Shown here piece by piece: positions 597 to 33,339 of a DNA stretch of 41,366 nucleotides. The position numbers and the translations under genes are program-made. The notes under the pieces were generated by a model. The model was not told where the DNA came from and did no database searches. It saw only the letters and a program-made list of their open reading frames with translations. Origin of the DNA: Octopus bimaculoides (Eukaryota); NCBI RefSeq assembly GCF_001194135.2, contig NC_068987.1, forward strand, positions 43,249,068 through 43,290,433, read 5' to 3'. Position 1 is the first letter of the stretch, and every line of letters begins with the position of its first letter.

Positions 597-746
597 GTTT
601 CCAAGTTAGGAAATGGTATAACTGTGGCATCTTTGGAAACTTACTCTCCTATATCACATGTGTCTATTGTGGTTAAAGCTGGCTCCAGGTATGAATCAGG
701 AGATAACTTAGGAATTAGTCACCTCTTGAGAAATATGGCTGGAATG
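597..746 (+). CDS. UQCRC2: UQCRC2 exon A (150 nt, phase 0-0)
   Basis: ttttcag|GTT...ATG|gtaagt; VSKLGNGITVASLETYSPISHVSIVVKAGSRYESGDNLGISHLLRNMAGM. Confidence 0.92.
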
Positions 747-6700: not shown

Positions 6701-9700
6701 CCAAACAACTGAAAGTGACTCACAGCCTTCAGCTGTTTATCAACAACTATGTTGTACACTCTAACTTGTCTGATGGTAGTGACGATGCTGATGGTGTTAC
6801 TGTTCTTGATAATGAGAAGTTTTGGTCAAACATTTGAGAGTAACTATTATGTATCCCAGATATGTCATTCTTCAGTTCCAATGAAGAACCATTTCTATGA
6901 TCAGCCATCATTTTAGAGAGCGACTCATTCTTTGACTTCTTTTCATGTATTTACCAGTTGCATCAGTATGTAGCAGACCACTACACAGCAGACCGTATGG
7001 CAGTTGTTGGCATTGGAGTTGACCATGAACATCTTCAATACTTGGTTGGCCAGTTCCAGTGCAGCCCCTCGTCTGGCATTTCTGATGCAAAGGCAAAATA
7101 TTGTGGCGGTAAGCAATGTTAATAATAATTTCAAAATTTTGACACAAGACAAGCACTTTTTAGTGGGTGGACAACAAGCAATAACATCGACTCCCGTGCA
7201 TTACTGGTACTATTTTATCGACTCCAACAGGATAAAAACGAATGTTGACATCAGCATAATTGGAACTCGAGAAGTAATTCATAGTGGCCAGTGACATGCA
7301 TTTGAACAACACAGACAAATACAGGACATGAAGTACCGTACAACATAAATTCTTTATTTATTAAAATTATCTCTTCTTGATGGTCTATCACAGTGTCTGC
7401 TAAATTTTTAGGATTTTCGTGAAACAACAATCCAAGAACATTCACAAAGTTTGAGCGTATATATAAATCTTAAAATACCGTAAATATAAATTAATTACAT
7501 TGCACGATGAACAGCAGTTTTGCTACAATATATTACATTTCTGCACTTAAACTGGGATTGTCTGTAAGCAAATTGTTTAGTAGTCCTAGTAGTTTTTAAT
7601 TTTTGATTTATTTATAATTTACATAAATTATTTTATGCTAAATTGTAATCGATTTTTAGATTTAAACATGGACAAATTTTTATTGAGACCTCAGAAAAAC
7701 GAGAAAGAGAATCATAGCAAACAAGACGAACACCTGAATAAAAAGTCCGCCTCATCAAAACGAAAATATAATGAAAATTATGTCCAATATGGTTTTATCA
7801 TCATCATCATCGTTTAACGTCCGCTTTCCATGCTAGCATGGGTTGGACGATTTGACTGAGGGCTGGTGGACCAGGAGGCGACACCAGGCTCCAGTCTGAT
7901 TTGGCAGAGTTTCTACAGCTGGATGCCCTTCCTAACGCCAACCACTCCGAGAGTGTAGTGGGTGTTTTACGTGCCACCGGCACGAGGGCCAGTCAGGCAG
8001 AACTGGCAACGGCCACGCTCGAAATGGTGTGTTTTCAGAAAAAGACAACTCAGTTTCTTTTTGTATGATTTGTTTAACAACACTCTCAAATGAAGTGATG
8101 GTTCCCAGTAAACTTCAACGTCATCTAATAACAAATCATCTGCAACTCAAGAACAAACCAAAAGAAAACTTTAAGATGCTAAAAAATCATTTAAAAATTC
8201 AATCAAAAAGGTTGAAGAAATTTCACTCAATTCCTGCGAAAGCTCAAATCACTAGTTACAAAATTGCCCAGCTTTTAGCAAAGAAGAAAAGACCACATTC
8301 TGATGCCGAAAACATTATTTTACCAGCCTTGGAGATCGCTATTGGCTCAATGATTAGTGATGAAGCTGTCAAACAAATTAAGATTTCTCATAAAATTCAA
8401 GACATTTCAAGAGACATTGATGATCAGCTCTGTGAACATTTCACTGAAGCAAAAAATGAACACGAAAACTTATGGGCCTTACAAATCGACAAAAGTACAG
8501 ACATCAGCAATAAAGCTCAACTAATTTCATTTCTACAAATCATCAGAGGTGGTAAAATCATAGGTCAGCTTTTCTTTTGTTGTGAATTGAAAGAAAGAAC
8601 AACAGGAAAAAATGTCTTTAACCTGGTAAACCAAAATGTTGTATTGAGAGGGATCCAGTGGCCAACTTATATTAGCGTTTGCACTGATGGAGCTCCATCC
8701 AAGCAGGGTCAAAAAAATGGTTTCGTGGCTCATGTATTACAAAAAAATTCACACTGTCAGATGGCCCGAGGGCCTATCTCTCTCAGGAATGACACGATAT
8801 GAACAAGGACAGGTGAAGTCCCTCCTGAACCTCGCCAACACTTTGTACATGGAACAAATAGTACTCCAACCAACCAGGGCAGATAACATACTGGATCTCT
8901 GCTTCACAAATAATACAGATCTCATACATAATGTGAAAGTGACACCGACGCTACTCTCGGATCACAACATGGTAGAGCTGACCATGTGCGGACCAAAGGA
9001 AACTATGGACATGCAGCCTACAAGAAACTCTCAGAATCTTTCCAATTTGAACTTCCTAAGGCAAACTGGAAACAAATTGAGAAAGAGATCCTCAAACAAA
9101 ACTGGCCTAAATGTCTCTCCTCACTGGACATCGACATGAAACTTTAACAATTCATGTCTGTAATGCAAGCCATATGCTACAAATGTATCCCAGAGAGAAA
9201 GGCCACTGTACACAAGAACAAAATCCCCAAGGAGAGGAAAATTCTTATGAGACGGCGTACAAAAGTTTCAAATCGCCTAAACAAANNNNNNNNNNNNNNN
9301 NNNNNNNNNNNNNNNNNNNNNNNNNNNNNNNNNNNNNNNNNNNNNNNNNNNNNNNNNNNNNNNNNNNNNNNNNNNNNNNNNNNNNNNNNNNNNNNNNNNN
9401 NNNNNNNNNNNNNNNNNNNNNNNNNNNNNNNNNNNNNNNNNNNNNNNNNNNNNNNNNNNNNNNNNNNNNNNNNNNNNNNNNNNNNNNNNNNNNNNNNNNN
9501 NNNNNNNNNNNNNNNNNNNNNNNNNNNNNNNNNNNNNNNNNNNNNNNNNNNNNNNNNNNNNNNNNNNNNNNNNNNNCAATTCAAAAGTGTTTTCACTCCA
9601 CCCCTAGGGCACTTTCAAGTAGCATTCCAACTGACTTTTTTACCACTGCAGATATAAAAACAGAGGCAATGATGATCAATTACATCAATATAAAGGAAGA

Positions 9701-12700
9701 CGATGTAATAAGGGCTATAGATGAAATGAACCCAAACTCAGCTACTGGCCCTGATGGATTCCCAGCAATCCTTCTAAAAGTATGTAAACGAGTCCTAGCA
9801 AGACCACTGCAGTCCCTCTTTCAGAGCTTCCTTGCATCTGGCAAACTCCCAAGAAAACTGAAGGAGGATGAAATATGCCCTATTCATAAAGGAGGTAGCA
9901 GAGCGGAGGCCAAGAACTCGCTGACCTCGCACATCAGCAAGGTCATGGAACGAATAGTCAGAAGAAAACTAATCGCGTTCCTTGAAGAAAATGACTTGCT
10001 GCCTGACACTCAACATGGTTTCCGACCAGGAAGAAGCTGCCTGACTCAGCTCTTACAACACTATGACTGGGTGCTGAAACAGCTACTTAACCACACAAAT
10101 GTGGAAGTGATATATCTCAACTCTGCAAAGGCCTTTGATAAAGTCGGTCATGGAATGATATGTCACAAACTGCATGATCTCAGCATAGTTGGACAATTAG
10201 GAAACTGGCTTCATGACTTTCTGAAGGATAGAAGTCAGGTGGTAGTAGCCAATGGGGCCACCTCTAATGACATGCAAATAGTGAGCGGTGTTCCGCAAGG
10301 CACTGTTTTGGGACCACTACTGTTCAAAATGGCCCTCTCAGATATGCCTTCAGCCACACAGAGAGCCACGATCACAAGTTATGCAGATGATACAAAAGTT
10401 TCACAGGTAATACAGAACCCTGAAGACACTATGCACCTGCAATGTGAGCTGGATGAAATATACAAGTGGGCTGAAAAGAATAACATGCAGTTTAATGCTG
10501 AAAAGTTTCAAGCCTTGTGCTATCAGCATGCAAAACTAAATGCAGTACCCATTAAATACACTGGACCTGGGGGGACTGCAATNNNNNNNNNNNNNNNNNN
10601 NNNNNNNNNNNNNNNNNNNNNNNNNNNNNNNNNNNNNNNNNNNNNNNNNNNNNNNNNNNNNNNNNNNNNNNNNNNNNNNNNNNNNNNNNNNNNNNNNNNN
10701 NNNNNNNNNNNNNNNNNNNNNNNNNNNNNNNNNNNNNNNNNNNNNNNNNNNNNNNNNNNNNNNNNNNNNNNNNNNNNNNNNNNNNNNNNNNNNNNNNNNN
10801 NNNNNNNNNNNNNNNNNNNNNNNNNNNNNNNNNNNNNNNNNNNNNNNNNNNNNNNNNNNNNNNNNNNNNNNNNNNNNNNNNNNNNNNNNNNNNNNNNNNN
10901 NNNNNNNNNNNNNNNNNNNNNNNNNNNNNNNNNNNNNNNNNNNNNNNNNNNNNNNNNNNNNNNNNNNNNNNNNNNNNNNNNNNNNNNNNNNNNNNNNNNN
11001 NNNNNNNNNNNNNNNNNNNNNNNNNNNNNNNNNNNNNNNNNNNNNNNNNNNNNNNNNNNNNNNNNNNNNNNNNNNNNNNNNNNNNNNNACTGCAATACCC
11101 TGTGCTTCAGAGGTCCACAGCTCTTCAATATCCTCCCGAAGGACCTGAGAGACCTGCATGGGGTGGATGTAGGTGTCTTCAAGATGAGGCTGGACCTCTT
11201 CCTGTCAGGTGTCCCAGATGAACCAACTTCGCGGCAGGAGGTGCAGATGAGGGCAGCTGCATCAAACTCTCTCATGCACCAAATATCAATTCCTGAAGTA
11301 AAACTGTGTAGCAACACTAAATGGCGGTGCCCCAGCATGGCCACAGCTCATGAGCTGAAACTAGATAAAATGAAAATGAAAAAAAAATGAAGTTAAAACT
11401 GTACATTGCATGATTCACCGCAAAGTTTTGGTGTCAAAATCTCTACTTGTGATAGTCTCCTGAAGATGATGAGCAACGTTGTTAAAGTGGTGAATTACAT
11501 AAAATCGCATTCCCTACAGTGCAGATTTTTTGCATCCCTATGCGAAACTATGGATTCTGATTTTAAGAGTTTACTGCTTCATACAGAAGTGCGACGGTTC
11601 CCAAAAGGAAAAGTGCTCTCTCGATTTATCTCTTTGTGAGCTGAAATATGTTTCTTTGATGCTGAAAATTGTGGATTTGAATTTGTAAACGATGATAATT
11701 GGTGGCTGGAAGTAGCATTTCTCAATGATCTTTTTGAGAAGTTTCAAATTTGAGTCTGCAAGGAGTGAACGAAAATATTATTACAATTACAAGTGAATTA
11801 AAGTCTTTCACTGACAAGTTAGAACTGTGGATAAGGAAAGTTAAAAACTTGCAGCTTGATTGCTTCTCAGGCCTATTTAAAATTTTGTCAGATGTGCAGA
11901 AGATGGTAGAAAACCTCTCTGTATCATTTTCTAAGTATTTTCCACCACTTGATTATCAAATGTACGAGTGGGTTATCAATCCTTTCGCAACATACGATAG
12001 TACACACCTGCCATTAACATTAACAGAAGAAAATTTAATTGTCTTGAAAAACGATTCTGTGCACAAAGCCTCATTTTCTGTGCTAAAATTGTCAGAATTT
12101 TGCTTTGGAGCAAATATCCTCGATTAGCTACTACAGCCACGAAATCTCTGTTACCCTTTGGATCAATGTATCTTTGCGAATTAGGTATCTCTGCACTTAT
12201 GGAAATGAAGTCAAAAAAAGGGAACGATTACAGATGGTAGATGAGAGTTATGTATTTATCTAATTTCTAAGCTGCGTTATGACAAAATTCTTTCTCAAAA
12301 TCAATTGCATCCTTCTCACTAAAAACATTAATTCTCACCCAGTGTGTCATAAGGTAAAAATGTTTGGCAGACACTATTCTCTCATAATTACAGAAGTAAA
12401 TTAAGACCAGCTCTGCTTGAGGAGAGGAGATAATCCCAAGATTCAAGAATTTTCCTAAGTTGACATGCCATTAAGGAAAAGACATGCTTATTGTCTGGAG
12501 ATATGAGGATACCTCTAACAGCCAAGGGACTTAGATTTATACAGAAAAAGAATAGAACACATTTATGGCCATGATAATTTGCATAAACAAAAAAATAGCT
12601 GAGAGGTTATACGGTGGCCAGTGGCATGTATTTGAGCAACATAGACAAATACAGGTACATTAAATAGCATACAACATAAAATCTTGATTTAGCTGTGTCC

Positions 12701-15700
12701 ATGACTGGTATCAGTGATAAATTATATTCCATTCTAAGGGAAGAATCTATCTTGTTTAACATAAGTAATCCCAAACAAAATGTCTGCTCTTAAAAGTAAT
12801 TTATGAGATTTAGAAGCATTTAAGAAATCTTGCTGTACAAAGAACACAAATTACAACTGTTTCTGCCACTTCTTTGGACAGTCTTTCATTTTTAATAATG
12901 ATAATATGCATCAACACATGGCTGTGAAAACAGTGTTTCTTGGTACAATTAATCAAAAGATCTTTTTATTTCCTGAAAATAGGTGAAATTCGAGTGGAGG
13001 CTAAGAATGATATGGTAACTGCTGCTGTAGCTACTGAAGGACCTTGGTAAGTTTACTAAACAGTATTCTCATGTTTGGATTAGTTGCCATTGATCCCTAT
13101 TAGCAAGATTACTAATACTGTTATCACTAAAACTGCACTAAATTCTTCTTGATTGAATTACATCACGCAGTAGGAGTGGCATCAGTTCTAACATACCTAC
13201 CTAAATTAATTCCACATGCACATATCCAACCTTTACTAGCATTGAAAAAAATAATTTTGAAACAAAACACACACACACCACAAATATTTATTACTAATCT
13301 AGGTGGCACCACCAGTGCATTCGTGTAATTTATATATGGTGTTTTAAAAAATTATTTAGTTGAAAGATGTGCAACCAGTGTCCATGGGCTTTGTAGTTCT
13401 TTCCAGACTGTTAACAAGTGTCTATGATGTTAGCTGTTAACCACTGTCAATCATTGTCTTGGCAGGGAAGGAATTAAAGGTGGAGTTGGGTAAGTTCTAA
13501 TGAAGAATGATTGGTAAAACCTTTTAGTGGAAAATGTTGGGTTAGACAGAGTAGTTGTAGTGTAAAAGTGACTGGGTGTTTGCTATATGGAAGTGATAAA
13601 AGTGTGTTATGAGGGTGGGTGATGGCTAGGTTTGGATGTGAGTAGTTGTTTGGACAGTCAGTGTGTTAAAGAGGTCTTTGGCTGAGTGAGAGAAGATTAA
13701 TGGGTGTAGTCAGTTCAGATGGCCGGATTATTTACCCTATGCATCAAGAATGTTGAAGGGGTGGGAGCCAAGAGTAATTGTGTGCATTGAAATAACTGAA
13801 GTTGGTGGCTTGAAAAGGGTGATACAAGATAGATGATGTTAACACTGAATGAAAGGTAGTTGAACAACTGTTAAAGAAGGAGAGAGAGTGTTAGAGACAG
13901 TAAATGAATACAGAGAAATGAAGGTGAGAGACTTTGAGTCATAGTAATTGCAAGTGGCTGTAGAAATCTTTTAGGAATTGATACATTTGTTATGGTCAGT
14001 AATGTTGCTAAAGTGTTTTCCCAGTGAGCATTACAGTAGCTTCTGTATTAGATGAGCTGCGTAAAATTTCAAACTATACTGTAGAAGTTCTGCTTAACCT
14101 TCACTTTCCAAAATACATTAACAGTTTCTGCACACTTTAACTACAAGTTTCTATTAAACAGTCTTATGCTGTCTGAAAAACATAAATGTAGCTAGCAAGT
14201 TTACTTAGAGATCAAGATTTGGGTTTGGTACCACTGCTTAGCATGTTGAGCAAATGACATCTAATAATAGGCTGACCAATTCTTGTGAGTTTAATTGTTA
14301 GACAGAAACTGTATGGGAGCCTGTTTTGTGTGTGCATTTGGTTTGACACCACTTGGACAATGATGAGGTTTATGTCCTGCATAAATATTTAAAAAATTAC
14401 CAGTTCCAAGTGCAAAAACCTGAAATAAAGTAACTTAATTGAAAACAAGTAAGGGTGATCACCAGGAAAGGCATGTAGTCAATAGAATACTGCCTCAAGA
14501 AGTTTTGTCCAACCCATAGCAGCATGGAAAAGTAGACAAAAACAATGATGATATGTTGTAGTGTTACCTTGGATTGTCTACACCTGTCTCAACAACCTGT
14601 TTTGCATGTGTGTGTGTGTATAGATGTGTGCTTTGTTTTTGCATCTTCTAAATATGTTGTTCACAGGAACTCAGCTTTGTCACACACAATACAACAATCT
14701 ACATACTGATAGCAGACTTAGTTAAGATAATGACTAACATATCCCACTATGCAAACCCTATGAAACAAGGAAACAGAACTTCATGCACCATATGCAATTC
14801 TCTGACCAGAAAGGTAGGATTCATGTATACAGGGGAGCTAGAAAGAAGTTAGATAGCATTATATATAATGAAGGCAGTGGTACCTGCCCTAGATACAGAG
14901 ACAAAGACTGGAATAGTATACAGAGAGTTTGTGACAAAGCAAAGTAAACACATGGTACAAGGCTGACAAATATCAAGGAGTGATGTTTGTAGAAGCCACA
15001 CCCCATGGGAACTAGCCAATAGATTTAGGAAAGCTCTGAAGGAGACCAAACTCAATACTAAGATGGTTGAAAAGCCAGGGAGTCCATCAGATCACAGTTA
15101 TGTAGGATGTTCCCCTTCGAAAATACCACATGCACTAATGAAAACTGTGTGGTATGTAAGATTAACCTAGGCATTAACTGTAGAACTAGAAATGTAGACT
15201 ACAGTGTAAAGTGCATAGAGAGTGCTTGTAAAGACAAAAACATGGCATACATTGAAGAAACATGATGACAAAAAACAGTCCTCCATACTCTACCAACGTG
15301 GAGGCACACTTGGCTAACTTGTCATACGCATTTTATCCAAGCACCTGAAGGGCCCATCACTCAGACAAATGCAGGAGTACATCCTCATATGTCCCCTGTA
15401 CTAAATAGAAAATACACATAGAAGGTAGTGATACCCCAATATCCCCAGAATATATATACATAAGTACATTTGCTAGTAGGCTGTTATCTAGGTATATATA
15501 TAAATAGGTAGGTAAATAGATATGTAAGTAAACAGATAGATACATAGGTTAGTAGATAGATAGGTATATAGGTAATACAGACGGACTATCGCGCGCACAC
15601 ACAAAAGGAGTTGGAACCATATACACGCACAGACACATATGGGGACACACATCCATACATAACAGATGCACATACATAATCACACAAACCCATACGCATA

Positions 15701-15958
15701 GACACACTCAAACATGCACACACACAAGGAGACAAAGGTACACATACATGTGCATACACAAGCACACATGTACACTGATGCACACACGTGCACAAACAAA
15801 CAAAAAAGAACGCAGCTCCAATAACAGACAGTCAACATCTATTGACGAGGTTGCAAAAGACAATGAAAATTTTGGAAGGAAAAATATAAGTAATGAGTGG
15901 AAATCGAACTGGTGTGTTAGATAATAAGACATTAAGACAATATGACTCTCCCCAGACA

Positions 15959-15989
<31 letters not shown>

Positions 15990-18900
15990 CGCACACACAC
16001 ACACACACACACACTTGGTGAATGAGTAATTAATACTTAGAAGGGCATCATCATCACCATTTTACATCCATTTCACCATACTTGCACTGGTTTGATGGGT
16101 TTTCCTTGCAAGTGTCTCCACTTGTCATAATCACTTGGCATCTTTGTGAGATTCAATATCGGGAGATCATCTTTCACCACACTTACCTTTGTTGTCCTTG
16201 ACCCAAGTGTCTGCTGCCATATGTAGTACATGCTCGTACTTTCAAGTCTCTTCTCTTGTACACCATATCTGACTCTTTTTTTTAAACTCAGTTTTCCTCT
16301 CCTCTCATTTGTGCCTTGTTGTTTATGCACACTAATATTACCAGAAGTTGTGTGTCTCCTTTCTCTCCATCTTTTGCACAACTTTCAATTACTATGTTTT
16401 GCTATCATGCAACATCATACCTCATTATGTCATATACTCTTCACTTTGAAAGAGAATCTGTTTCCAATAGCAGTAACATAACATCTCCCTAAATTTCTCA
16501 CTCTGTTCATTATGCTTTTGGCACACCTAACTCCATCTACTTCTATGGAGACTTCCAAACAGCCCAAAGACCTTATTTCACCAGTGATCTTACTGTTTAT
16601 TGCTCCTTGCATCTGCTACATACTTAGTCTTCCTTCTCAATCAGCTTGCTTATAATTCTACTACACCTTTGGAATTCCTACCTACTCTTTTACTTCATAT
16701 CAATCATGACTGCTTCTCTGATGGTAGTCTTCTTGCCTGCTAATTAAAATTTTTGACCTTGCCAGATTTTCTTTGAGGTTCCTCAGTTCTTGTCCTTGCT
16801 TCAGCATACAGAAGTTCCTATTGGCAGCCACTTTTAATCTACTCTCTTAAGTCCTGGAGAACTATGATAAATAACAGGGGTATAAAGTCTCACCAGCAAT
16901 CTAAATTCCTCATTGAATTTATTTCCAACCCTTTCCTTGCTGATAATACCTCCTCTGTACATGGTTCTCACAAGCCATTCATCTCTATCTAGCTTACTTA
17001 GTGGCCACCAGACTACAGTGCCTATTACCCACTCAAGGATCTTTTCCAGACTGATATATGCTAAGAATAATTGTTTACATATTACTAAAATCTTGTTGCA
17101 TACTTGTCTTACTAGGAAGAGAGTATCAGTGTTACCCCATCCTGTCACAAATCTGAACTCAATTGAGCCTATTTAAGCTAATTCTCTTCCTAATCAGTTG
17201 TACTAAAACTCATTCTCTTAGTTTCATAACTTGGTCTGTTATAATAGCTCTGTAGTTACTTCGAACATCTCTGTCCTTATAGCAATTGAAAAGGATACTG
17301 TCATGCCAGTCATTGAGTATGGCACATCCCTGTATGACCTTGTTGACTATCTTGAGTGCTATTTCACCAGATATTTTCAGTGTCTCACCAACTGTCCATG
17401 ATACTCCAGTTGTTTCCCTACTTTCTTGTCCTTAATCACACTTTCAGTCAAAGAGCTTTCAAATTCAGTGACTATCCTTCTTTTGAGTCTACATGGGGAA
17501 GTGTGTCTGCCTTCCACACATTCATTATGATCAGGAACTTTTTGTTATAGTGTAGCCAAGTCCATTTCTTCTCATCAGTAAGTGTGCTACTGTTATTCTG
17601 AACATATTTTCTCTCCTATTGGTGTCTTGATTCATACTAACACATTGCTTTACAATCCAAAATGCCTCACACCTCTGATCCTCTTGTTAAAGAACATTGC
17701 TAACCTCTTTCCTGATTTCTACCTACCCAATGTTATTATCAGCTCCTTGTTTCTTCATCATCATCATCATCATCGTTTAACATCCGCTTTCCATGCTAGC
17801 ATGGGTTGGACAATTTGACTGAGGACTGGTGAAACCGGATGGCAACACCAGGCTCCAATCTAAATTTGGCAGAGTTTCTACAGCTGGATGACATTCCTAA
17901 CGCCAACCACTCAGAGAATGTAGTAGGTGCTTTTACGTGTCACCTGCACGAAGGCCAGTCAGGCGATACTGGCAACGGCCACGCTCGAAATGGTGTCTTT
18001 TATGTGCCACCCACACAAGCCAGTCCAGGGGCACTGGCAACGATCTTACTTGGCTTNNNNNNNNNNNNNNNNNNNNNNNNNNNNNNNNNNNNNNNNNNNN
18101 NNNNNNNNNNNNNNNNNNNNNNNNNNNNNNNNNNNNNNNNNNNNNNNNNNNNNNNNNNNNNNNNNNNNNNNNNNTCTCACACACAGCACATTTCCAAAGG
18201 TCTCGGTCAGTAGTCATCTTTGGAAATGTGCTGTACATGAGAAGACCCGGCAAGCCAAGTAAGATCGTTCCTATCTGTAAAAACATCATCATTTTAACAT
18301 CCACTTTTCTGTGCCCTTCTTGTCACCAAGCCTCAGCCATTTGCAAGCAAAGTAATATTTCCCTATGGTTAGACATGTTTTTACAGAAAACTGCCAATGA
18401 ATGATACTGCTTCTATCACATGATGTTAACACACATACTCACACAGATTGGTGTTAGGAAAGAGAAACCTTACCAAAACAGACACTGGAACTTGACAAAA
18501 TCCCCATACCTGCTATATCCTGTCAGACTGTTTAACCCATATCAACATGGAATATAGATTCTAAAGATGATGATATATATGTACATGGCAAGCTTCTTTC
18601 CCGTTTTTGACTTCTAAATCCACTCAAAACTTTGGTCAGCCTGGGAATATAGTAGAAGACACTTGTCCAAGATGCTGCATAGTGGGACTAAACCCAAAAC
18701 CATTTGGTTGGGAAGCAAGTTTCTTAACCACACAACAATGCCTGTACTTATCTATTCCTGATATTCTGAAAAAATAAATCATCCAACTCGTGCTAGTATA
18801 AAAAAGTGAATGTAAATGAGAAAACACACTTTTATATATCTATCTATCTATAACATAAATCAACAAACAAATAAAAAGGAAACATTGTAAGTAGTATATT

Positions 18901-20826
18901 CCTGTTTGTCTTTAGTGTCTACAGACACATATAGACAATAGTGTTTATGAAATTCTACTGCTATATTAAGTGACTTGCCTTGCATGATTCTCTTCCTCTC
19001 AGCATTAATGGAAGGACAAAACGGTAAGTAATGGCCATGGTCATTTCATGTTTGACTCATAAAATCAATGTTTTTTCTTTCTCTCTTTACTTTATTTTTT
19101 ACCATTCTTCCTATATTGTACCAATGATTTGTTAATCTTTCCCTGCTTGCTTCCATGTTTGTTTCACCTCCAGTCACTCCAAATTCAGTAGTTCACACCC
19201 TCCAGCACCTGCCTATCCTAGTTTTTAATGTTTAACTTTAATTTGTCAATGTGGATGATTTACTTTACTTTTTTTGTGAAAATATACTTAACTGAAATTG
19301 ATTGTTGTTGTTTCATCTTGTCTATAATTATTATAGCATCAATTATTGCCTAAGATTGATGATATCTGCTATGTCTCCCTTGTCACCCTATGAAATAGGC
19401 CTTGAGTCTGATCAAAAGAACTTGTTTATTGTAATTGTTGCTCCTCTTAACATTGGGTCACACCAAAGTTATAAAGTTCATAGAAACGGGGATAGCTGTA
19501 TACACAGACGAAGAACATTTCCATAAAAATATTTCTCAATTCTGGAGATGTTTTGTAAGATCTTAACCATATTTTTCTCTTTGTCTAAGTTTACTGACCA
19601 CAGAAATTCTATTGGTTTAATAAAATTTTCCAACATTTGTGATCATAATGAGAGGTTCACTGACTACAATTGTGACATCTCTTGTCTTTAACCCATTAAT
19701 ATTCATTAAACTTGCACCCAACTTCAAGTTTTGTAATGTTAAATGTTTTCAAAGGTTGGATAATACTTCCTCTGGACATACAGAAGTGAATATGAATGAA
19801 GAATAAGGCAGGCATGGATGTGAGATTAAGAAGCTTACTTCCCAAACTTGTGGTCTTGGGTTCAGTTTCTGTGTGCAGCACCTTGGGAAAAGTGCTGCCT
19901 TCTGTAGCCTCAAGCTAACCAACACATTGTGAGTGAATCTAATAGAGAAAAACTGAAAGAAGCCAGTCATGTGTGTGCATGTACCCTTCCTTATCTTGGT
20001 AGTCTGGGTTGGTCGTAAATGAGCATCACTGTCTTACAAGTGATGTTGTTCATTTCCAGTCTTCTATGAGAAACATGTTAACAAATATGTTATCATCATG
20101 ATTGCTTTTGACACCAGATTATGACATAGTATATAAAATACAAGGCTAGACACTTTGTTCGGTGTGCTGTTTCTGAATTTGAATCTGACCACTCTTTACT
20201 TTGCTTGCTGTACCTTTGGGATCATTATATTATCTTTCTACCAAAGGTTTTTTGAGCCTTGGTTAAAAAATAAGAACTTTTAAAGATTTATCATTCAATC
20301 AGCATGTTTTATTGTTGCTGTTGTTTTTTTTTTTGTTTTTTTTTGTCATTATTGATGTTGTTGTTAAGATATTTGGCTGGTAGAATTGTTAGTATTGGAC
20401 AAAATGGTGGCTTGTGGTGAAAGGCAAAGACATTTAAACTCGTAGCAGTTCAGTTACATTGTTTCGGTAACATGTCTATCTGTAAGTGATCAAAGGCATG
20501 CAAACCATGACCTTCCTGTCAGAAACAGTGTTACCCAGGAACTTAATTATCTTATGTGCCCTTGAAAACTGGTTGGGTGTAATCTGAACGAGGTTTACCT
20601 GATACTTGTAGCTGGTCAAGTGACTACAAAAAAACCCTTTGAAGAAGATATAGCAAATGGTACAACTACTTTCTGGAAGTAGCAGGAACACTATGTAAAT
20701 GAGGATTGTTTTAGTAGTTGATGGTACTGAATCCAAATCCTCCTATGAGTTTAATCTTGTGTTGGGAAGGTTCACTTACCCAAGATATACCAGCATGTCT
20801 TTAAGTATTTATGTATTGCTCTTGGT

Positions 20827-20866
<40 letters not shown>

Positions 20867-21576
20867 NNNNNNNNNNCAAGCAACACACCACATTATCTGT
20901 GCATTTGCCAGAGTCTTTAAGTACCTCACTTTTTGGTACCCCTGTTGTTGGTATAAAATATCAGTCATATCCTCACTTCTGAAATGTTTGTATTGTTCAT
21001 TATTGAATGATGTGTACTTGCTGGTGTGGAGCAGTTTGGGCTGAATCATTGTAGAATACTTAATTGTACTGTATCACTGTAAAGTTCTTGTCAATAATAT
21101 AGAGGCTGAGCATCCTCTCACCATACTGCAACATGCCATTTTCAAGGCCTTTAATGAGGCCTTCAAGAAGTCTAGGTTATGCATAAAAATACGTTTTTGT
21201 TGATTCCAAAGAATTATATTTACTCTGAAGTTCTTAAATTCTTAAAAGCATCTAATTTATATCTCTATTCTTATTTTCATAATTAAATTTTCACAATAAA
21301 TGTAATTAGGTTTTTCCACATGTTTCACAAAATTTCTGTAAATAGAGCCCTGTTAGATTAGACTGAGTTCAATGCAGCCTTCCAATATACAATCCCTGGT
21401 TCAAAACATACATGTATCATTAAGGTGTACATATGGCTGTGTGGTTAACAAGTTTGCTCTTGTCCCACTGCATGGCATTTTAGTCATGTGTCTTCTACTT
21501 TAGCCCCAGGATGACCAATGCCTTATATGTCAGTTTGGTAGGTGGAAATTGTGTGCATAAATCCATCACACCACAT

Positions 21577-21617
<41 letters not shown>

Positions 21618-24600
21618 CACACATTTATATGTTGAGTTGAGGAATAATTCTGGAGCGTTTTTTTTTTAAATTTATTTTAAACAAAAACAACAAATTTATC
21701 AATAATATACTCTTTATTGTTGTTTATGACTTCCTCCCATCATTCAATAAGTTTTTCAATGCCTTGGCGATAGAAATCTCCCAGTCTTGACTCAAAGAAT
21801 TTGTTCAGCAAAGCTCTCAATACCATGTCATTATTGAACGATACACCACACAAAGTTATTGAAAGAAATGAAAATTTGATGGCACCAAGTCTGGAGATTA
21901 TGGAGGATGAGGCAGCACTTCCCATTTGAGTTCTTGAATTGCAGCTTTGGCCATATTGGTGATGTGAGGATGGTCGTTGTTTTGTTGCGGAAGAATACCA
22001 TTTCGCCTATTCAGTCTTTTTTGCTGAATTGCTTCATTTTGTCATTGCAGTTGTTGAATGTAGAGCTCTGCATTGAGTGTTTGGTTGCACTCAGTGCCAT
22101 CATACACACAACATCATCTTTCAAGGACAAAGGTCTTGTTTTCCTTGCAGAGTTGCTTTTTTGTCGGGGCTGAGCCATCTTTTTGCTGCTTCATATTGGC
22201 TTAAAGGCACCATTTTTCATCGCCAGTGACAATGCAGTAAAGAAAATGCTATTTGTGATCATGTATTGAGCAATGTCAAGCGAGCAAACTGGCGGCAATT
22301 GTGGAGTGTTGATGTTTGTTGTTTGCGCTTAAAGTGTGTGGCACCCAAGCACTGATTTTCTGAACCTTGCCCATTGAGTGAAGGTGATTCACCTCAGTTT
22401 TTTTATCACAATCCATCTGGTCTGCCAATTCTCTGGTCATTTCATGTGGATTTTTGTGAAGAAATTGTTTCAATCACTCTTCATCGAACTCAATTAGTCG
22501 ACCGGTGTGTGATCTGTCCTTAAGGTCAAAATTCCCCTTTTTGAAGCACAAAACCTTACAGCAGGCGGTACTTTGAGGCATTGCTTCTTTTCCACGCACA
22601 ACACAAATCTCACAAGCAGTTTTGGTGACCTTAACACCTCCATTAAATCCAAAAAGCAAATGGTGTCGGAAATGCTCAGTTTTGTCCATTCGACATTTCA
22701 TTTTAATGATCTGAAAATACACAAAAATCAATAAAATTAAAAAATCAAAATACACTATCTTGTAGAGTAAAAAATTCTCTTTTCAATAACATGAAACATT
22801 TTGCCAATGTGTTTTATTTCTGTGTGCATTTTAAAATTTGAATAAAATGGTCATGAATTATTCCTCAACCCAGTACGTATGCTGCTTGCTTGCTGCTTCA
22901 TGCTCTTGCTTGATGGAGCTGGGGTCATCCCAGATTAGTGGTCCCAGAGATGTCATGTGTAGAGCCAACCAGGTCCACCAGTGCTTTCCATCACTGGCAG
23001 TCCCATGCCAGCCATCTGGGCCAGGGCTTGCCATGATGCCTCTTTCAGTCAACAACTGCTGCAACAGATAGCTATGAGGTGGGAGGCTGCAAGCTGATGC
23101 ATGCAATTCTTTGTTGGAAACCTGATGGCACCATCTAATGTTGTTGATGGTTCTCAGGGTCCTACTATCAAATCTGTCAGTCCCCTTTGCCAGGGTCTTT
23201 AAGAGGAGCCATGTTTGTGCTCTATAGAGGCGAATGGAGAGGACCAATGCATTGCAGATGTGGAGCTTCATCTTCCAGGAGAGAGAGCAGTGGCACCAGA
23301 GGGGCGTTCATAGGGAGTAAATGACCCTGGTAGCCAGACAACATCTGAAGTTCATCTCCATTGTTGGTGATTGTGGGGCCCAGATAGATGTATGTTTGTG
23401 TATGTCTCTTTGCTTGACAACTGGTGTTGGTTTCATTGTGTCCTTTGTAACTTAACAGTTTGGCAAAAAGTGACTGATGAAATAAGTAATAGGACTGATC
23501 CAGTTGACTAAGCTTCCTCAAGATGATGCCCCAGAATAGCTGCAATCCAATGACTAAATCAAGTAAAGGAGTAAAATGTGTGTGTACAAGGGAACTAATT
23601 TATTTGTTTGTGTTAAGAATTATTCTATAATGTTTACATTCTGCAAACATTCAAATAATTATCTGTTAATGGTCAACTGATTCAACTATACCACCTCTTT
23701 TGGATATTTTATACTACTTCTTAGTCCTTGATTATCAAATTAAAAGAAATTAAATGTCTTTAATAAAGTGTTTGAAAATATTTTTATACCCATAAAATCT
23801 TTCTCCTGTTTTGTTTATCGTTTCCTTTTTGTTTATGCAGTGTATTGTTTTTCCTTCCAATTTTATAGTCTGCCCAGCAAAGACTTGTTACCTGCATGTA
23901 TTATGCAGATGATCATGGGAACTGGACCGTTTGTGAAGTACAGTACCAACAATAAGATCTCCCGACTTGGTAAGGCAGCTGGGTCAGCCACTTCAGCTCC
24001 TTTTGGTGTAAGTACCATTTAGAATCATCATCGCCATAAGAAAGAGAGAGTGCCAATATAAGTATTTATGGTATTTAGTCCCAACTGTTTATACTCTGAG
24101 TTTAAATTTGTGACCTGCTACTAAAATTCAAAATCATAATTATTACATCTGTTTTTACATTCTGAGAGCAAATCCTGCTAAGCTTCATTTTACCTTTCAT
24201 TATTCTAATTGTCAATAAAATGTGTCTAGTATTGGGATTGATACAGTTAACTGTTTCCTCCACTGTAAATTCCTGGTTGTAGATTGGTGATAATAGTAGA
24301 GTACTGGACTAAATAGTTATTACATCACTTTGTGCTGAGTTCAGTTTAGCCTTTCATCTTTCTATTATTGAGTTGGTTTAATCACACACACACACACATA
24401 CACACATGCTTTATGAGAGTCCCTTTAAAACAAAACAGCATTTAACCACTATCTTTTTATTTTATGTATACATTTATATTTAGAGTTGGCCTTACAAAGA
24501 ACTCTTTCATTGCCCATCTCCTGGAAATCACTCTAGAAAGAGCTTTCTATTGGATCAACTCTAAATAAATATGTCAACTCTGCATAAAGAATCAACTGCC

Positions 24601-26070
24601 GTGTGTGTGTGAGTATATATATATATACACACATATAACACTGGTTGTTCAGTGTTATATATGTACAAAAGTGTTGAAACCATTTGGTTAGGACCTTACA
24701 ATTTTGCCTCAGGATTCTCCATTTAAAAGTATTGTGTCCTTCCTTGTGTGAATGGGCTCCCTAATCCCTGAATTAAGGTAACTCTGTTCATATACATGCG
24801 TGTGTGTGTGTGTGTGTATGAGGGGGTAACCACCAGAAACATTCTCTGTGGGACAAGCCTGTTGTAGTTCAGGCTTCCGCTGCAGAAGCCACTTGATGCA
24901 ACCCTCAGGCATCAGTCTGCCAACCAGCGTCATTGAATGAAGTCATACTGCCACATGATGTGTCTTTGTTTTATAGTGCTTCTCCCCTGATAAAAAGGAA
25001 CAGCGTGCTTCTGTGAAATTTTGTTTACTGCTGGGAAAAGCGGCGGCCAAAAGAGTTGTCATGCTTCAAACAGCTTATAAGGACATTGCCATGAGCAAAA
25101 CACAAGTTTGCAAGTGGTTTTCACACTTTGGGAATGGTCATTTGTTGCTTGAAGACCAACCTCATTCAGAGTGACTGCTGAGCTCCCAACAAATGAAAAC
25201 ATGAAAATTCACTAACTGATCTTGGAGGACCGTCACTGGATAATTGACTAACTTGTTGATATGAGTGGTGTATCCTGGAGCTCCTGTCAGCAAATTTTGA
25301 GCAAGGAAATGCGAATGAAAGAGTTGCAGCAAAATTTGTGCCTTGCTTGCTTACAGAAGATTAAAAGCAGTCATGACTGAATGCATGTCATGAACTGAAA
25401 AAACAGGTGGAAGTTGATCCAAAACTTTTTCTGGAGGTCATCACTGGTGATGGAAGCTGCTGCTACAACCCGGAAATGAAACAGCAATCAAGTCAATGGA
25501 AGTATTCAATGTAACCACACCCCAAAAAAGCACATCAAGTGAAGTCTGATGTCAAGCCAATGCTGATTTGCTTCATCATTGTGAAAGGAATTGTCTGCAT
25601 AGAATTTGTTCCTCCTGGTCAAACTGTTATCCAGACATTTTACTTGACAGTTCTGAAGCATTTGTGAGATGTAGCTAAGTGGAGAGTGGTGGTTTCATCG
25701 CGTCAATGTGCCTACACCCACCACCTTAAGTGTGAGACCATTTTTGCCAAAAATGGCATGACCTCGCTTACCCACCCTCGCTATTTGCCTGATCTTGCTC
25801 CCCACGACTGTTCTCTGTTCTCTTGAATGAAAAAAATGTCCTTAATGGAAAACGTTTTGCAGATGTGGAAGACATGAAGAAAAAAAATGACAGAGGCGTT
25901 AAAAGGCATCACTTCACAAGAGTTCCAGGACTGCTTTGAACAGTGGAAAACACATCTGGACCAATACATTGCTTCATATGGAGAATACTTTGAAGGTGAA
26001 AAAAGTGTAAACATATAAAACTAAGTGAATAAAATATTGCAAAATTCTGGGGTGTTTGGGGTACCCCCTC

Positions 26071-26151
<81 letters not shown>

Positions 26152-29100
26152 CACGCATTTGTCAAGATTAATAACATCAGAAAAAGTTCCATGCAGAAAC
26201 TAGTTTTTAATATTTTTTAAACAGAAAATACATCTGTGATTTCAGACTTTCATGAGATTATCAAATAGTTATCAAGCTTCAAAGCCACAGTCATATTTTC
26301 TGTTTAATACATGTGTGCACACACACACACGTTCTTTATTTAAATATTTTTCTCTCCCTCTCTTGTATTTTCTAGATTTCATGTATCAGCAGTGCCTACT
26401 CTGATGGAGGTATATTTGGTTTTGCTGCAACTGCAGACAAGGCAGATATAGGAAAGGTCAGTTTATATTTGAAGTCAACAGTTCAGCTGAATTGTAAGAT
26501 TATCTTGTTAGTTGGCTTTGTATTTCCCTTCTCTCCTTTCCTCAATGAAGATTGGGTACTAAGAGACTTTGATATTAAGTTTCAGAGCTCTCAAAATTGG
26601 TTTTGTTGTTCAAATTCTTCACTTCCTGTCATTTTATGTTTTTGTACATATTTGATATTCAGCTATATAAATAGGTCAGAGTCTAACCCATGGCAGCATG
26701 GAACATGGACATTAAATGATGATGATGATATATATATATATTTTTTTGATATTTTATTTGGGCATTGCAATACTAATAACCTGTTGTAGAGCTGAATATA
26801 CATATGCTTCTGTATGAAGTGTTAGTCAAATACAGAGTGGTAGTAAGAAATTGAGATGGCAAAGGAATAAATAATTATCTTATGATCTATAAGGTGATAT
26901 TCAGGCACTTAACTATGAGTCCATTGTATCTTATAGTCGAAACAGCTGTAGACAAATGAAGTTCATAAGATAATTGTTTATTCCTTTGTCACACACAGAT
27001 GTGTGTGTACACACACACACACACACACTTCCACTATTTCCACCAATCTTTCTGTGCCTTCTGCCATACTTCATTTTTAACACCTATCTTTCTCAATACC
27101 TTTTCATATCTACCATCACACCCCACTTACTATAACTCCCTTATGTACCTCTACTACCCACTACTCTTATACCTTGCACATCATTCTGCTACTTTCTGAT
27201 CTTTTCTCTTTCCTGAGCAACTCCTATATCTCTCTCCTTACCCCTACCCTAACTGGACCTCCACTCTTGTTCATTATCGCTACATTCACCCCTACCACCA
27301 ACACTAACCATCTATTACTATCCCCTCACACTTTTATGAAACTTTCCCCACTCCACATCTGCTAATCCACTATCTACATCTTCTCTTATACCCACCATCT
27401 CTATCTTCTTTCTAAATACTCCCACCCACTCTTATATAATGCAGAGTATTCTTGTATCTCCTCTTGAGCAGAACACCTGGACTTGTCTTCCGTCATTCTT
27501 TATTGCCTAACGTTTCCAAGTAGTAATATTTCCCCATGGCTAGTACAACAATGACACTTGTTTACAACAATCATGCAATGTCAAGATCAAAAGATACAAC
27601 TTGCAAAACACTCACACACATATGTATATTCAACAGGCTTCTTTCAGTTTCCATTTACCAAATCCACTCACATGGCTTTGATTGGTCTGGGGCTATAATA
27701 AGCACCTGCCCAAGGTGCCACTCAGTAGAACTGAAGCAACAAGCAACCTTCTTACCACCCAGCTGTGCCTGTGCCTCATGGTTACATGATGGTTCAGTGA
27801 GTGAAAGCAGCTGATTTTTATATCTTCTTAATTTTTTTTTTTGTTTTATTATGTTTATCTGATCTCAGTTAATTTTTGCTGTATTTCTTAATACTAGATA
27901 TATAAATAATGTAAGGTGAATGTTTTATGTTTAATGGATTAACGATAATATTATACTAGTGTATTTTAATGTGATATGAGATAGCAGGATGGTAGATGAC
28001 ACACTTGGTAGAAAATCAGCCAAAAAGATTTATGGCATTTAGTTAGATCTTGAGTTTTAATTCCAACTGGTTTTGAGTTCCCTTTCAGCCAGTCAGGGTC
28101 AATAAAAAGTACTAGTTAATTACTAGGAGTTAAATCAGTCAATAATACCTTTACTTCTGTATGCTGATGTAGTTTAAGATTCAAATGTACAGTTTGTGTG
28201 TTTGACATCAAGCCAAGAGGGAACATGTTTCTATGTGTATCTAAATATTCTCCATCAAACTGATTGGTAACATGCTTGTGTGTATAAAATATTGAGCTAA
28301 ACCAAAATAACAGGAAATGTGTTTGTATAACATATTGTTCTACATTAAACTGACAGGAAACATGCAGTGTTTGTGTAATGTATTGTTCTACATGAAAGCA
28401 ACAGGGAATGTGTCTGTATAATATATTGTCCTGCATCAAACTGACAATGAACATAGTGATTGTGTAACTACATTAAACCAACAAAGAGTGTGTTGTTTAT
28501 AATATATCATTTTAAATCAAAGTGACAGGAAACATTTTAATTTCTTTTTGTTTCTGCAGACTACTTTCATGTTTCTTTCCTTCGTTTCTAAGGTTCTGAA
28601 AGCTGCCTTTGGGGAGTTTGCTAGTATCACCAAATCTGGATTTAGTGAAGAGGAGATCTCCCGGGCTAAGTAAAGTCATTTTTTTTTTACCTTTTTATAT
28701 TATGGCTGGTTTGTTTAATTAACTTTACCCTGATCTGGCATTGCAGCTGTTTGCTCTGTCATACAATATTTGGTTGTGTAAGTGAGGTAGTCAAGGTATT
28801 TGGAATCTTCCTTGATGTCCCATCGTTTTGATATGGTTGTGTTAAGGATGCAATCCTGGGATGTAGCTTCAAAAGAAAATCTGTTGTATTCTGGCTGCTA
28901 CATTGAGCAGGTCAAGTAAGAAGTGTCATGCAATGGTTGAGTATTTAGTTGGTAAAAAGCTGTGAAAGTTGATCTGTTGCAGAGAATAGCGAGGTAGTGT
29001 GAAAGAAAGTAGAATGTTAGTTTTGCCTGCAAGAGAACTTTATAACATTGGTTGAATGTATACTTTCTATACAGGAACCAGCTGAAGGCAGCTGTGTTGA

Positions 29101-33100: not shown

Positions 33101-33339
33101 ACATTCAGATGCCCTTCCTGTCACCAACCAAGGTCATATTCTCCATGGCCAGACATATTTTTCACAAAGACTGGAAACAACACTACTTGTATAACTGATA
33201 CTTTTTTACAACCATCATGTGATGTCAAGACAAAGGAACAGACTTATACACATGACCAGTTTCCATCTACCAAATCCACTCACAAGGCTTTGGTGAGCCT
33301 GGGGCTATATAGTAGTAGTCACATTGCATCAAATGCTGC

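What the first reader, a model, noticed from the sequence alone, without database searches (positions are those of the whole stretch)
18960..19035. Candidate 21-nt, possibly neural-type, microexon inside mitochondrial complex III core protein 2
Seen: in a 10.8-kb intron, a 21-nt segment has a clean pyrimidine tract with no AG for 30 nt (tgacttgccttgcatgattctcttcctctc-AG) and a perfect GTAAGT donor. It is phase 2-2 like exons G and H, so inclusion turns TEGPC|LPSKD into TEGPC-INGRTKR-LPSKD with no stop. UGC triplets lie at 18976 and 18981, the second within UGCAUG (the Rbfox motif). Established: frame-preserving microexons of 27 nt or less with UGC motifs just upstream of the 3' splice site typify the Srrm3/4 (eMIC domain) neural microexon programme. 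Inference: the skipped form aligns without gaps to human [23 protein letters not shown], so this would be an optional, basic 7-aa insertion giving a tissue-specific complex III isoform. I know of no such isoform for UQCRC2.
Basis: partly seen in the sequence, partly recalled or inferred. Interest (0 to 1): 0.8.

Follow-up and report, generated by a model that had tools for sequence, protein, structure and literature searches.

The report
Conserved 21-nt microexon in octopus UQCRC2
The 21-base segment is a real, optionally included mini-exon of the octopus gene for complex III core protein 2; it is already in public gene annotation, is kept unchanged at protein level in octopuses, cuttlefish and squid, and where and why it is included is still unknown.

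Summary
Window 19003-19023 (AG acceptor 19001-02, GTAAGT donor 19024-29) lies in the 10,822-nt intron between UQCRC2 exons 12983-13046 and 23869-24007. Including it gives TEGPC-INGRTKR-LPSKD.

The window-derived inclusion protein is identical to residues 40-462 of RefSeq XP_014789960.1, O. bimaculoides isoform X1. The skip form equals isoform X2. The same +7-aa isoform pair is annotated in O. sinensis, O. vulgaris and Sepia pharaonis. Two assembled transcripts, one from a sepiid and one from a squid, also carry the insert.

The exon and its splice sites are present in Argonauta and Sepia genomes. There it is the only collinear conserved island in the intron. All six variable nucleotides among six cephalopod sequences are synonymous.

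Gastropods (Pomacea, Babylonia, Haliotis, Lymnaea) have other basic alternative exons of 27-57 nt at the same junction.

The insert lengthens a loop at the start of the inactive M16_C domain.

The 'neural / Srrm eMIC' reading is untested. Cis features fit it (UGC at -22/-24 conserved, 30-45-nt AG-free zone, UCUC tract), but no tissue data could be obtained.

The isoform is not new to databases. I found no paper describing it.

The parts
597..29914 (+). UQCRC2 (cytochrome b-c1 complex subunit 2 / core protein 2) gene, exons 2-13 of the skip form. Exon 1 (first 39 aa) lies upstream of the window. Exons: 597-746, 1171-1235, 2323-2379, 3155-3279, 5487-5584, 6958-7108, 12983-13046, 23869-24007, 26376-26456, 28593-28669, 29075-29228, 29825-29914.
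   Evidence: tblastn and manual splice model give a 1251-nt open CDS. The product is identical to residues 40-455 of XP_014789963.1. Pfam Peptidase_M16 and M16_C match. Best PDB matches are core protein 2.
12983..13046 (+).
13047..23868 (+). 10,822-nt intron that hosts the microexon.
18962..18972 (+). Candidate branch-point region (tatTTAAGtga; CTAAG in O. vulgaris, TTAAA in Argonauta, TTAAG in Sepia). Inferred only.
   Evidence: Partly invariant columns in the 4-species alignment. Position 31-41 nt upstream of the AG.
18976..18986 (+). UGC motifs: 18976-78, and 18981-83 within UGCAUG 18981-86. The second TGC is invariant in O. bimaculoides, O. vulgaris, Argonauta and Sepia (-22/-24 from the exon).
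18988..19002 (+). UCUC-rich polypyrimidine tract (ttctcttcctctc) and acceptor AG (19001-02).
19003..19023 (+). 21-nt alternative cassette microexon, C ATT AAT GGA AGG ACA AAA CG, encoding (C)INGRTK(R).
   Evidence: It gives residues 277-283 of isoform X1. It is present in the genomes of O. vulgaris, Argonauta hians and Sepia pharaonis and in two transcript contigs. Only synonymous differences occur.
19024..19029 (+). Donor GTAAGT, invariant in four coleoid genomes.
19030..19311 (+). Downstream intronic block still alignable with Argonauta, part of HSP 18903-19311. Possible regulatory sequence; function inferred.
   Evidence: (E 2e-22)
23869..24007 (+).

Best explanation
Window 19003-19023 is a genuine alternatively spliced cassette microexon of the Octopus bimaculoides UQCRC2 gene.

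Shown: the exon has a strong acceptor (13-nt UCUC tract, 30-nt AG-free zone) and a consensus GTAAGT donor. It can be spliced in or skipped. Skipping gives the 455-aa protein (isoform X2). Inclusion gives the 462-aa protein (isoform X1), with INGRTKR inserted between Cys276 and Leu284. Both forms are made in several cephalopods, and the peptide is under strong purifying selection across coleoids.

Partly shown: in an AlphaFold model the insert lengthens the loop between a beta-strand (265-273) and the first helix (289-299) of the inactive C-terminal M16 domain.

Inferred: inclusion is regulated through the conserved intronic sequence around the 3' splice site, with an invariant UGC at -22/-24. 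The leading candidate regulator is the Srrm234 eMIC domain in neurons, at about 0.35. The basic loop would then tune some surface or cavity property of complex III core 2 in particular tissues.
For: 1. The inclusion product built from the window is identical to residues 40-462 of RefSeq XP_014789960.1. The skip product is identical to 40-455 of XP_014789963.1.
2. The same +7-aa pair is annotated in O. sinensis, O. vulgaris and Sepia pharaonis.
3. Assembled transcripts carry the insert: Logan SRR7548197_7107 (a sepiid) and JGI Ga0192992_10002732 (a squid). Skip-form contigs of one sepiid protein come from 12 contigs, and the 10 listed are each from a different run.
4. The exon, its AG and its GTAAGT are present in the orthologous intron of Argonauta hians, where only the skip form is annotated, and of S. 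pharaonis.
5. In blastn of intron against intron, the microexon region is the top hit against both Argonauta (18903-19311, E 2e-22) and Sepia (18979-19029, 83%) and the only collinear one. The remaining hits map out of order or to a repetitive stretch.
6. Six sites vary among six cephalopod sequences and all six changes are synonymous. Only 13 of 63 possible single-base changes are synonymous, which gives roughly 8e-5 under neutrality. The whole protein is only 60-66% identical between octopods and decapodiforms.
7. By sequence criteria it is the only such candidate in 82.7 kb, against 0.06 expected per intron.
8. In the AF2 model (pLDDT 90) the insert lies in loop 274-288, with a local confidence dip to about 72. 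No solved core 2 has the insert.
Against: - No quantitative or tissue-resolved inclusion data could be obtained, so 'regulated' and 'tissue-specific' remain inferences.
- The annotated isoforms are computational models. A 21-nt exon cannot plausibly be modelled without transcript evidence, but I did not see that evidence itself.
- The function of the loop is unknown, and I could not place it in the three-dimensional complex.
- The housekeeping nature of UQCRC2 is unusual for the neural microexon programme.
Confidence: 0.93

Rival explanations
1. Chance pseudo-exon or splicing noise: good-looking splice sites that are not used, or used only as errors.
For: With thresholds set at the weakest real exons of this gene, 4 in-frame pseudo-exons occur in the intron against 2.1 expected. 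One other candidate, 13466-13489, also has GTAAGT.
Against: Exact match to annotated isoforms in four species and to two independent transcript contigs. Conserved exon and splice sites across octopods and decapodiforms, with synonymous-only changes. The 13466-13489 control has no counterpart in the Argonauta or Sepia introns.
Confidence: 0.02
2. Regulation A, the reader's idea: inclusion is neuron-enriched and driven by the eMIC domain of Srrm234 binding the UGC just upstream of the polypyrimidine tract.
For: - Length is 21 nt.
- UGC is invariant at -22/-24 in four coleoid genomes.
- The AG-exclusion zone is 30-45 nt, with a UCUC-rich tract and a TTAAG/CTAAG branch-point-like element.
- These are the features listed for eMIC exons in flies and mammals (PMC8797185 section 10).
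- Lymnaea's exon at the same junction has UGC at -15 and -11.
- Weak hint: the run holding the sepiid inclusion contig (SRR7548197) is ten accessions after SRR7548187, an O. vulgaris stellate-ganglion library (PMC8967140 Table S3).
Against: - No tissue data.
- The splice sites are strong, whereas fly eMIC exons have very weak ones.
- Haliotis and Babylonia counterparts have no UGC within 50 nt.
- The host gene is a ubiquitous mitochondrial protein.
- Neither the link between SRR7548197 and a neural tissue nor the species of that run is established.
Confidence: 0.35
3. Regulation B: inclusion is tissue- or stage-regulated by other factors (for example Rbfox through UGCAUG, or muscle/heart-type regulators), or is a fairly constant minor or major fraction in all tissues.
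For: - UGCAUG lies at -22 in three octopods and additionally at +21 in Argonauta.
- Two UGCAUG lie at +19 and +41 downstream of the Haliotis exon.
- An inclusion transcript was assembled from a marine metatranscriptome (JGI 3300019054; I take this to be whole small animals, though the sample type was not checked), which argues against a very rare form.
- From memory: tissue-specific splicing of OXPHOS subunits is best known from muscle (ATP synthase gamma).
Against: UGCAUG is absent within 300 nt on either side in Sepia. An upstream Rbfox site usually represses rather than activates (established knowledge). No expression data.
Confidence: 0.55
4. Evolution: the cephalopod exon and the gastropod exons at the same junction arose independently, by recurrent exonisation in one intron, rather than descending from one molluscan microexon.
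For: - Lengths differ: 21, 27, 27, 30 and 57 nt.
- Peptides are only loosely similar: INGRTKR, TGKFGKTGR, TGAFGKKGR, CRPRNQGTRG and RQFLKSSKAKKEKQPEPSLG.
- The bivalve Mercenaria has a roughly 385-nt intron here; I saw no microexon on reading it, but ran no candidate scan.
- Recurrent evolution of tissue-specific exons in the same genes is reported to be common (bioRxiv 10.64898/2026.09.05.749416).
Against: Same intron, same phase, all basic. There is a shared G-[RK]-[TK]-[KG]-R-like core between cephalopods and caenogastropods, and both end in CG| to complete an Arg codon.
Confidence: 0.45

Closest known systems
RefSeq model XP_014789960.1, 'cytochrome b-c1 complex subunit 2, mitochondrial isoform X1' of Octopus bimaculoides (with XP_029638999.1 O. 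sinensis, CAI9726289.1 O. vulgaris, CAE1245788.1 Sepia pharaonis)
   Same: It is the same object. The window's inclusion product equals residues 40-462 of this protein, insert included.
   Different: Nothing at sequence level. The database entry carries no statement about conservation, regulation or function, and I found no paper on it.
Srrm3/4 (Srrm234 eMIC)-dependent neural microexons of vertebrates and Drosophila
   Same: Length of 27 nt or less, frame-preserving, deeply conserved peptide, UGC close to the 3' splice site, long AG-exclusion zone, UCUC-rich tract. The insert falls in a surface-type loop of a folded domain.
   Different: Neural enrichment and eMIC dependence were not tested. 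The host is a housekeeping respiratory-chain subunit rather than a synaptic, signalling or trafficking protein. Both splice sites are strong.
Tissue-specific isoforms of OXPHOS subunits, e.g. muscle-specific skipping of exon 9 in ATP synthase gamma (ATP5F1C) and the paralogue-based heart/liver COX subunit isoforms (from memory, not checked here)
   Same: A core respiratory complex made in two protein versions from regulated expression.
   Different: Those cases affect a C-terminus or use gene duplicates. Here a 7-aa internal loop of complex III core 2 is toggled. I know of no counterpart in vertebrate UQCRC2, and none appears among the solved structures.
Alternative exons at the same UQCRC2 junction in gastropods (Pomacea canaliculata X1/X3, Babylonia areolata X1, Haliotis rufescens X1, Lymnaea stagnalis model)
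   Same: Same intron position and phase, optional, basic, Gly/Lys/Arg-rich inserts of 9-20 aa. Caenogastropod TGKFGKTGR/TGAFGKKGR share a G-[RK]-[TK]-[KG]-R core with INGRTKR.
   Different: Different lengths and mostly different sequence. Donors are weaker (GTATGA, GTATGT, GTATAT). No proximal UGC in Haliotis or Babylonia. Homology versus recurrence is unresolved.

Membership tests
UQCRC2 / complex III core protein 2 (non-catalytic M16 peptidase-like) | Peptidase_M16 plus Peptidase_M16_C domain pair | tested here: met
   PF00675 at 1.9e-32 and PF05193 at 3e-16 on the window-derived protein.
UQCRC2 / complex III core protein 2 (non-catalytic M16 peptidase-like) | Closest solved relatives are core 2 rather than core 1 or MPP subunits | tested here: met
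   Bovine, ovine, human and chicken core 2 score about 4e-40, against alpha-MPP at 6e-20 or weaker and core 1 at 3e-10 or weaker.
Alternatively spliced cassette microexon (27 nt or less, frame-preserving) | Length at most 27 nt and a multiple of 3, with no stop in the host frame | tested here: met
   21 nt; gives C-INGRTKR-L.
Alternatively spliced cassette microexon (27 nt or less, frame-preserving) | Canonical splice sites on both sides | tested here: met
   AG acceptor and GTAAGT donor in four genomes.
Alternatively spliced cassette microexon (27 nt or less, frame-preserving) | Both inclusion and skipping products exist | tested here: met
   X1/X2 pairs in four species; two inclusion contigs; 12 skip-form contigs of one sepiid protein.
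Alternatively spliced cassette microexon (27 nt or less, frame-preserving) | Conservation above intronic background | tested here: met
   The microexon region is the top and only collinear hit against the Argonauta and Sepia introns. All differences are synonymous.
Srrm3/4 (eMIC) neural microexon programme | UGC motif close to the 3' splice site, long AG-exclusion zone, UC-rich tract | tested here: met
   UGC at -22 (octopods) and -24 (Sepia); AG-exclusion zone 30-45 nt; ttctcttcctctc tract. Feature list from PMC8797185.
Srrm3/4 (eMIC) neural microexon programme | Inclusion enriched in neural tissue | not testable with these tools
   No read-level RNA-seq access. The only hint is that a neighbouring SRA accession is an O. 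vulgaris stellate-ganglion library.
Srrm3/4 (eMIC) neural microexon programme | Inclusion depends on the eMIC domain of Srrm234/SRRM3/4 | not testable with these tools
   Needs a minigene or knock-down experiment.
Rbfox-regulated exon | Conserved (U)GCAUG within about 300 nt of the exon | tested here: inconclusive
   Present at -22 in O. bimaculoides, O. vulgaris and Argonauta, plus +21 in Argonauta. Absent within 300 nt on either side in Sepia.

The most novel reading that the evidence does not exclude
The cephalopod microexon and the gastropod exons at the same junction descend from one alternative exon that predates the cephalopod-gastropod split. Its inclusion would be tissue-specific, neural through Srrm234-eMIC or otherwise. 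The basic loop it adds sits next to the vestigial, MPP-like substrate cavity of core 2: the helix that follows it leads into the counterpart of the alpha-MPP glycine-rich loop (my recollection of the M16 fold, not tested). There it would change presequence or subunit binding, or supercomplex contacts. That would give molluscs a spliced, tissue-specific form of respiratory complex III.
Probability: 0.15. Interest if true: 0.7.

Novelty: already known. Interest (0 to 1): 0.42.

Why it matters
Tissue-specific versions of respiratory complexes are usually made from duplicated genes. A deeply conserved 7-residue splice insert in a complex III core subunit would be an unusual second route. Its peptide is invariant across coleoids while the rest of the protein has diverged to 60-66% identity, and similar basic inserts occur at the same junction in gastropods. 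Together these say the loop does something that selection sees.

It is also a clean, easily testable case for asking whether the microexon programme of cephalopod nervous systems reaches into mitochondrial housekeeping genes.

For the scan itself, it shows that a tool-free reading of splice signals can pick out a real 21-nt exon from a 10.8-kb intron. It also shows that 'I know of no such isoform' needs a database check: the isoform is already annotated.

Tried and rejected
- A 75-aa query across the junction found nothing in the protein index. The full-length query was needed.
- Literature searches for UQCRC2 + microexon, octopus + microexon and cephalopod + microexon gave no paper on this exon. 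The most relevant preprint, which has O. bimaculoides tissue-specific splicing, has no supplement held as text and does not mention UQCR or mitochondria.
- I tried to find the tissue of SRR7548197. The accession is in no paper. A neighbour, SRR7548187, is O. vulgaris stellate ganglia. Two further searches for the source study found nothing. I treat this as a hint only.
- Placing the loop in the three-dimensional complex was not possible. The model's coordinates are not exposed to scripts, so only secondary structure and pLDDT are reported.
- The second strict-ish pseudo-exon, 13466-13489, was rejected. It is absent from every annotated isoform seen and has no match in the Argonauta or Sepia introns.
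- Isoform pairs outside Mollusca (Latimeria, Diadema, Nematostella) differ elsewhere in the protein, not at this junction.
- The Mercenaria intron is about 385 nt. I saw no microexon on reading it and ran no candidate scan.
Full report
OBSERVATION.
- The exon is window 19003-19023 (21 nt), with the acceptor AG at 19001-02 and the donor GTAAGT at 19024-29.
- The nearest upstream AG is 30 nt away.
- TGC sits at 18976-78 and 18981-83. The second is part of TGCATG.

GENE MODEL.
- Twelve exons from 597 to 29914 on the + strand give an open 1251-nt CDS.
- Exon 1, the first 39 residues, lies outside the window.
Exon H is 23869-24007 and starts T CTG CCC. The intron between them is 10,822 nt.
- Including the 21-mer keeps the frame and gives TEGPC-INGRTKR-LPSKD.

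CHANCE. I used thresholds typical of this gene's real exons: at least 14/20 pyrimidines, an AG-free zone of at least 20 nt, a perfect GTAAGT, length at most 27 nt, in frame and without a stop.
- The candidate is the only hit in the intron and on both strands of the whole window.
- Markov-1 randomisations of the intron give 0.063 hits on average.
- At the thresholds of the weakest real exons there are 4 hits against 2.1 expected.
- The signal was therefore good but not conclusive on its own.

IT IS AN ANNOTATED, EXPRESSED EXON. A full-length protein search, its alignment and the cluster listings gave the following.
- The inclusion product is identical to residues 40-462 of RefSeq XP_014789960.1, 'cytochrome b-c1 complex subunit 2, mitochondrial isoform X1 [Octopus bimaculoides]'. 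The skip product is identical to 40-455 of XP_014789963.1, isoform X2. The window is therefore O. bimaculoides.
- Pairs that differ by exactly INGRTKR at exactly this junction are also annotated in three other species: O. sinensis (XP_029638999.1 / XP_029639000.1), O. vulgaris (CAI9726289.1 / CAI9726288.1) and the cuttlefish Sepia (Acanthosepion) pharaonis (CAE1245788.1 / CAE1245792.1).
- Two assembled transcripts carry the insert. One is Logan contig SRR7548197_7107; its protein is 93% identical to the Sepia cluster, so it is a sepiid. The other is contig Ga0192992_10002732 of JGI sample 3300019054, a squid-like sequence.
- The skip form of one sepiid protein lies on 12 contigs, and the 10 listed are each from a different run. 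Skip forms were also assembled in three other decapodiform lineages.
- Both products therefore exist, and skipping looks like the commoner assembled form.

CONSERVATION. I fetched the genomic loci of O. vulgaris (L001), Argonauta hians (L003) and S. pharaonis (L004).
- All three contain the exon in the orthologous intron, with an AG acceptor and a GTAAGT donor. This includes Argonauta, where only the skip isoform is annotated.
- In blastn of intron against intron, the best hit against Argonauta is window 18903-19311 (E 2e-22). The best hit against Sepia is window 18979-19029 (53 nt, 83%), that is the exon with its splice sites. No other hit is collinear; the rest map out of order or to a repetitive stretch.
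- The six exon sequences are:
  - O. bimaculoides and O. vulgaris: C ATT AAT GGA AGG ACA AAA CG
  - Argonauta: C ATA AAT GGC AGG ACA AAA CG
  - S. pharaonis: C ATA AAT GGA AGA ACA AAA CG
  - sepiid transcript: C ATA AAT GGA AGA ACG AAG CG
  - squid transcript: C ATA AAT GGA CGG ACG AAA CG
- Six sites vary and all six changes are synonymous. Only 13 of the 63 possible single-base changes are synonymous, so the pattern has a probability of roughly 8e-5 under neutrality.
- The peptide is invariant, while the whole protein is only 60-66% identical between octopods and decapodiforms.
- This is protein-level purifying selection over the octopod-decapodiform split, which is a few hundred million years from general knowledge.

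CIS ELEMENTS. The four-genome alignment and motif counts show the following.
- A TGC is invariant at -22 in octopods and -24 in Sepia.
- There is a UCUC-rich tract, TCTTCC.CTC.
- The AG-free zone is 30-45 nt.
- A TTAAG/CTAAG-like element lies about 35 nt upstream.
- These are the features listed for eMIC-dependent exons in flies and mammals (PMC8797185 section 10).
- UGCAUG is conserved only among the three octopods. Argonauta has a second copy at +21. Sepia has none within 300 nt.

GASTROPODS. The same junction, with the same intron phase (..GGN CCN AG|gt), carries other optional exons.
- Pomacea canaliculata X1/X3: TGKFGKTGR.
- Babylonia areolata X1: TGAFGKKGR (27 nt).
- Haliotis rufescens X1: CRPRNQGTRG (30 nt).
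- The Lymnaea stagnalis model: a 57-nt lysine-rich exon.
- All are basic, and the caenogastropod peptides share a G-[RK]-[TK]-[KG]-R core with INGRTKR.
- The bivalve Mercenaria has only a roughly 385-nt intron here. I saw no microexon on reading it, but ran no candidate scan.
- Isoform pairs outside Mollusca differ elsewhere in the protein.
- I cannot tell whether this is one ancient molluscan exon or recurrent exonisation. Recurrence of tissue-specific exons in the same genes is reported to be common (bioRxiv 10.64898/2026.09.05.749416).

PROTEIN CONTEXT.
- The protein has Peptidase_M16 and Peptidase_M16_C domains, and the insert lies in M16_C.
- Against solved structures the best matches are mammalian and avian core 2 (about 4e-40). 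The insert appears as a 7-residue gap in the AESAA|IGSAE loop, about Ala263/Ile264 of mature bovine core 2. No solved structure has it.
- An AlphaFold2 model of O. vulgaris X1 (mean pLDDT 90, pTM 0.86) puts residues 277-283 in a coil (274-288) between strand 265-273 and helix 289-299. Local confidence falls to about 72.
- From my memory of the M16 fold, that helix is the domain-2 counterpart of the HxxEH helix, and it leads into the counterpart of the alpha-MPP glycine-rich loop. The insert may therefore lie near the core 1/core 2 cavity.

REGULATION IS THE OPEN QUESTION.
- I could not obtain tissue-resolved data.
- The only hint is that SRR7548187, ten accessions before the run that yielded the sepiid inclusion contig, is an O. 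vulgaris stellate-ganglion library (PMC8967140 Table S3). The link to SRR7548197 is unproven.
- I put the eMIC/neural reading at about 0.35, and other regulators or broad alternative splicing together at about 0.55.

COMPARISON AND NOVELTY.
- The object is the same as an existing RefSeq isoform, so as a sequence feature it is already known.
- It meets every tested criterion of a conserved cassette microexon and the cis-motif criterion of the eMIC class. The two defining functional criteria of that class, neural enrichment and eMIC dependence, could not be tested.
- I found no publication on it.
- As far as I could search, what is undescribed is its strict conservation across coleoids, the positional counterparts in gastropods, and any function.

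VERDICT.
- The neural label is open.
- Interest is moderate (0.42): a solid, testable, conserved splice isoform of a respiratory-chain core subunit. It is an ordinary kind of feature and is already annotated.

Noticed in passing
window 1-596: Exon 1 of UQCRC2 (39 aa, MASRVCRSLIHPVRGRLLTSQAAAVHDVDTSSSLQPVTK) is not in the window, which starts inside intron 1. A (GAT)n/(AT)n microsatellite lies at about 175-215.
   Followed up: partly
window 36148-36801 (-): A 217-aa ORF with a weak integrase-core (rve) match (E 6.6e-5, below Pfam's cut-off), in a GC-richer stretch (36-40 kb, GC 0.42-0.46). Probably a decayed LTR-retrotransposon remnant downstream of the gene. The ORF at 33062-33556 (+) had no Pfam match.
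   Followed up: partly
window 13466-13489: A second in-frame 24-nt pseudo-exon with a GTAAGT donor and a weaker acceptor. It is absent from every annotated isoform seen and has no match in the Argonauta or Sepia introns. A useful negative control.
   Followed up: yes
L006 13162-13191; L007 8617-8643; L009 11177-11233: Gastropod alternative exons at the same UQCRC2 junction and phase: Haliotis rufescens 30 nt (CRPRNQGTRG), Babylonia areolata 27 nt (TGAFGKKGR), Lymnaea stagnalis 57 nt (K-rich). Pomacea canaliculata X1/X3 has TGKFGKTGR (protein only).
   Followed up: partly
L008 about 18771-19156: In the bivalve Mercenaria mercenaria the orthologous intron is only about 385 nt, in the same phase. 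I saw no microexon on reading it, but ran no candidate scan.
   Followed up: partly
L001 1-220, L003 1-369, L006 1-312: A BRAT1-like gene lies head-to-head upstream of UQCRC2 in O. vulgaris, Argonauta and Haliotis. This neighbourhood is conserved between cephalopods and a gastropod.
   Followed up: no
P0126/P0127 (Sepia pharaonis, 625/632 aa); P0016/P0139 (Pomacea): The S. pharaonis models run about 170 aa past the conserved ...LDELYK end into low-complexity sequence, probably an annotation artefact. Pomacea X1/X2 carry an extra 18-aa insert (YRLQADFGMYMETSSSLL) at the junction corresponding to window exons 28593-28669 / 29075-29228.
   Followed up: no
L003 +21 of the microexon; L006 +19 and +41: UGCAUG copies lie just downstream of the alternative exon in Argonauta and Haliotis. 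That is the position where Rbfox usually enhances inclusion. They are absent in O. bimaculoides, O. vulgaris and Sepia.
   Followed up: partly
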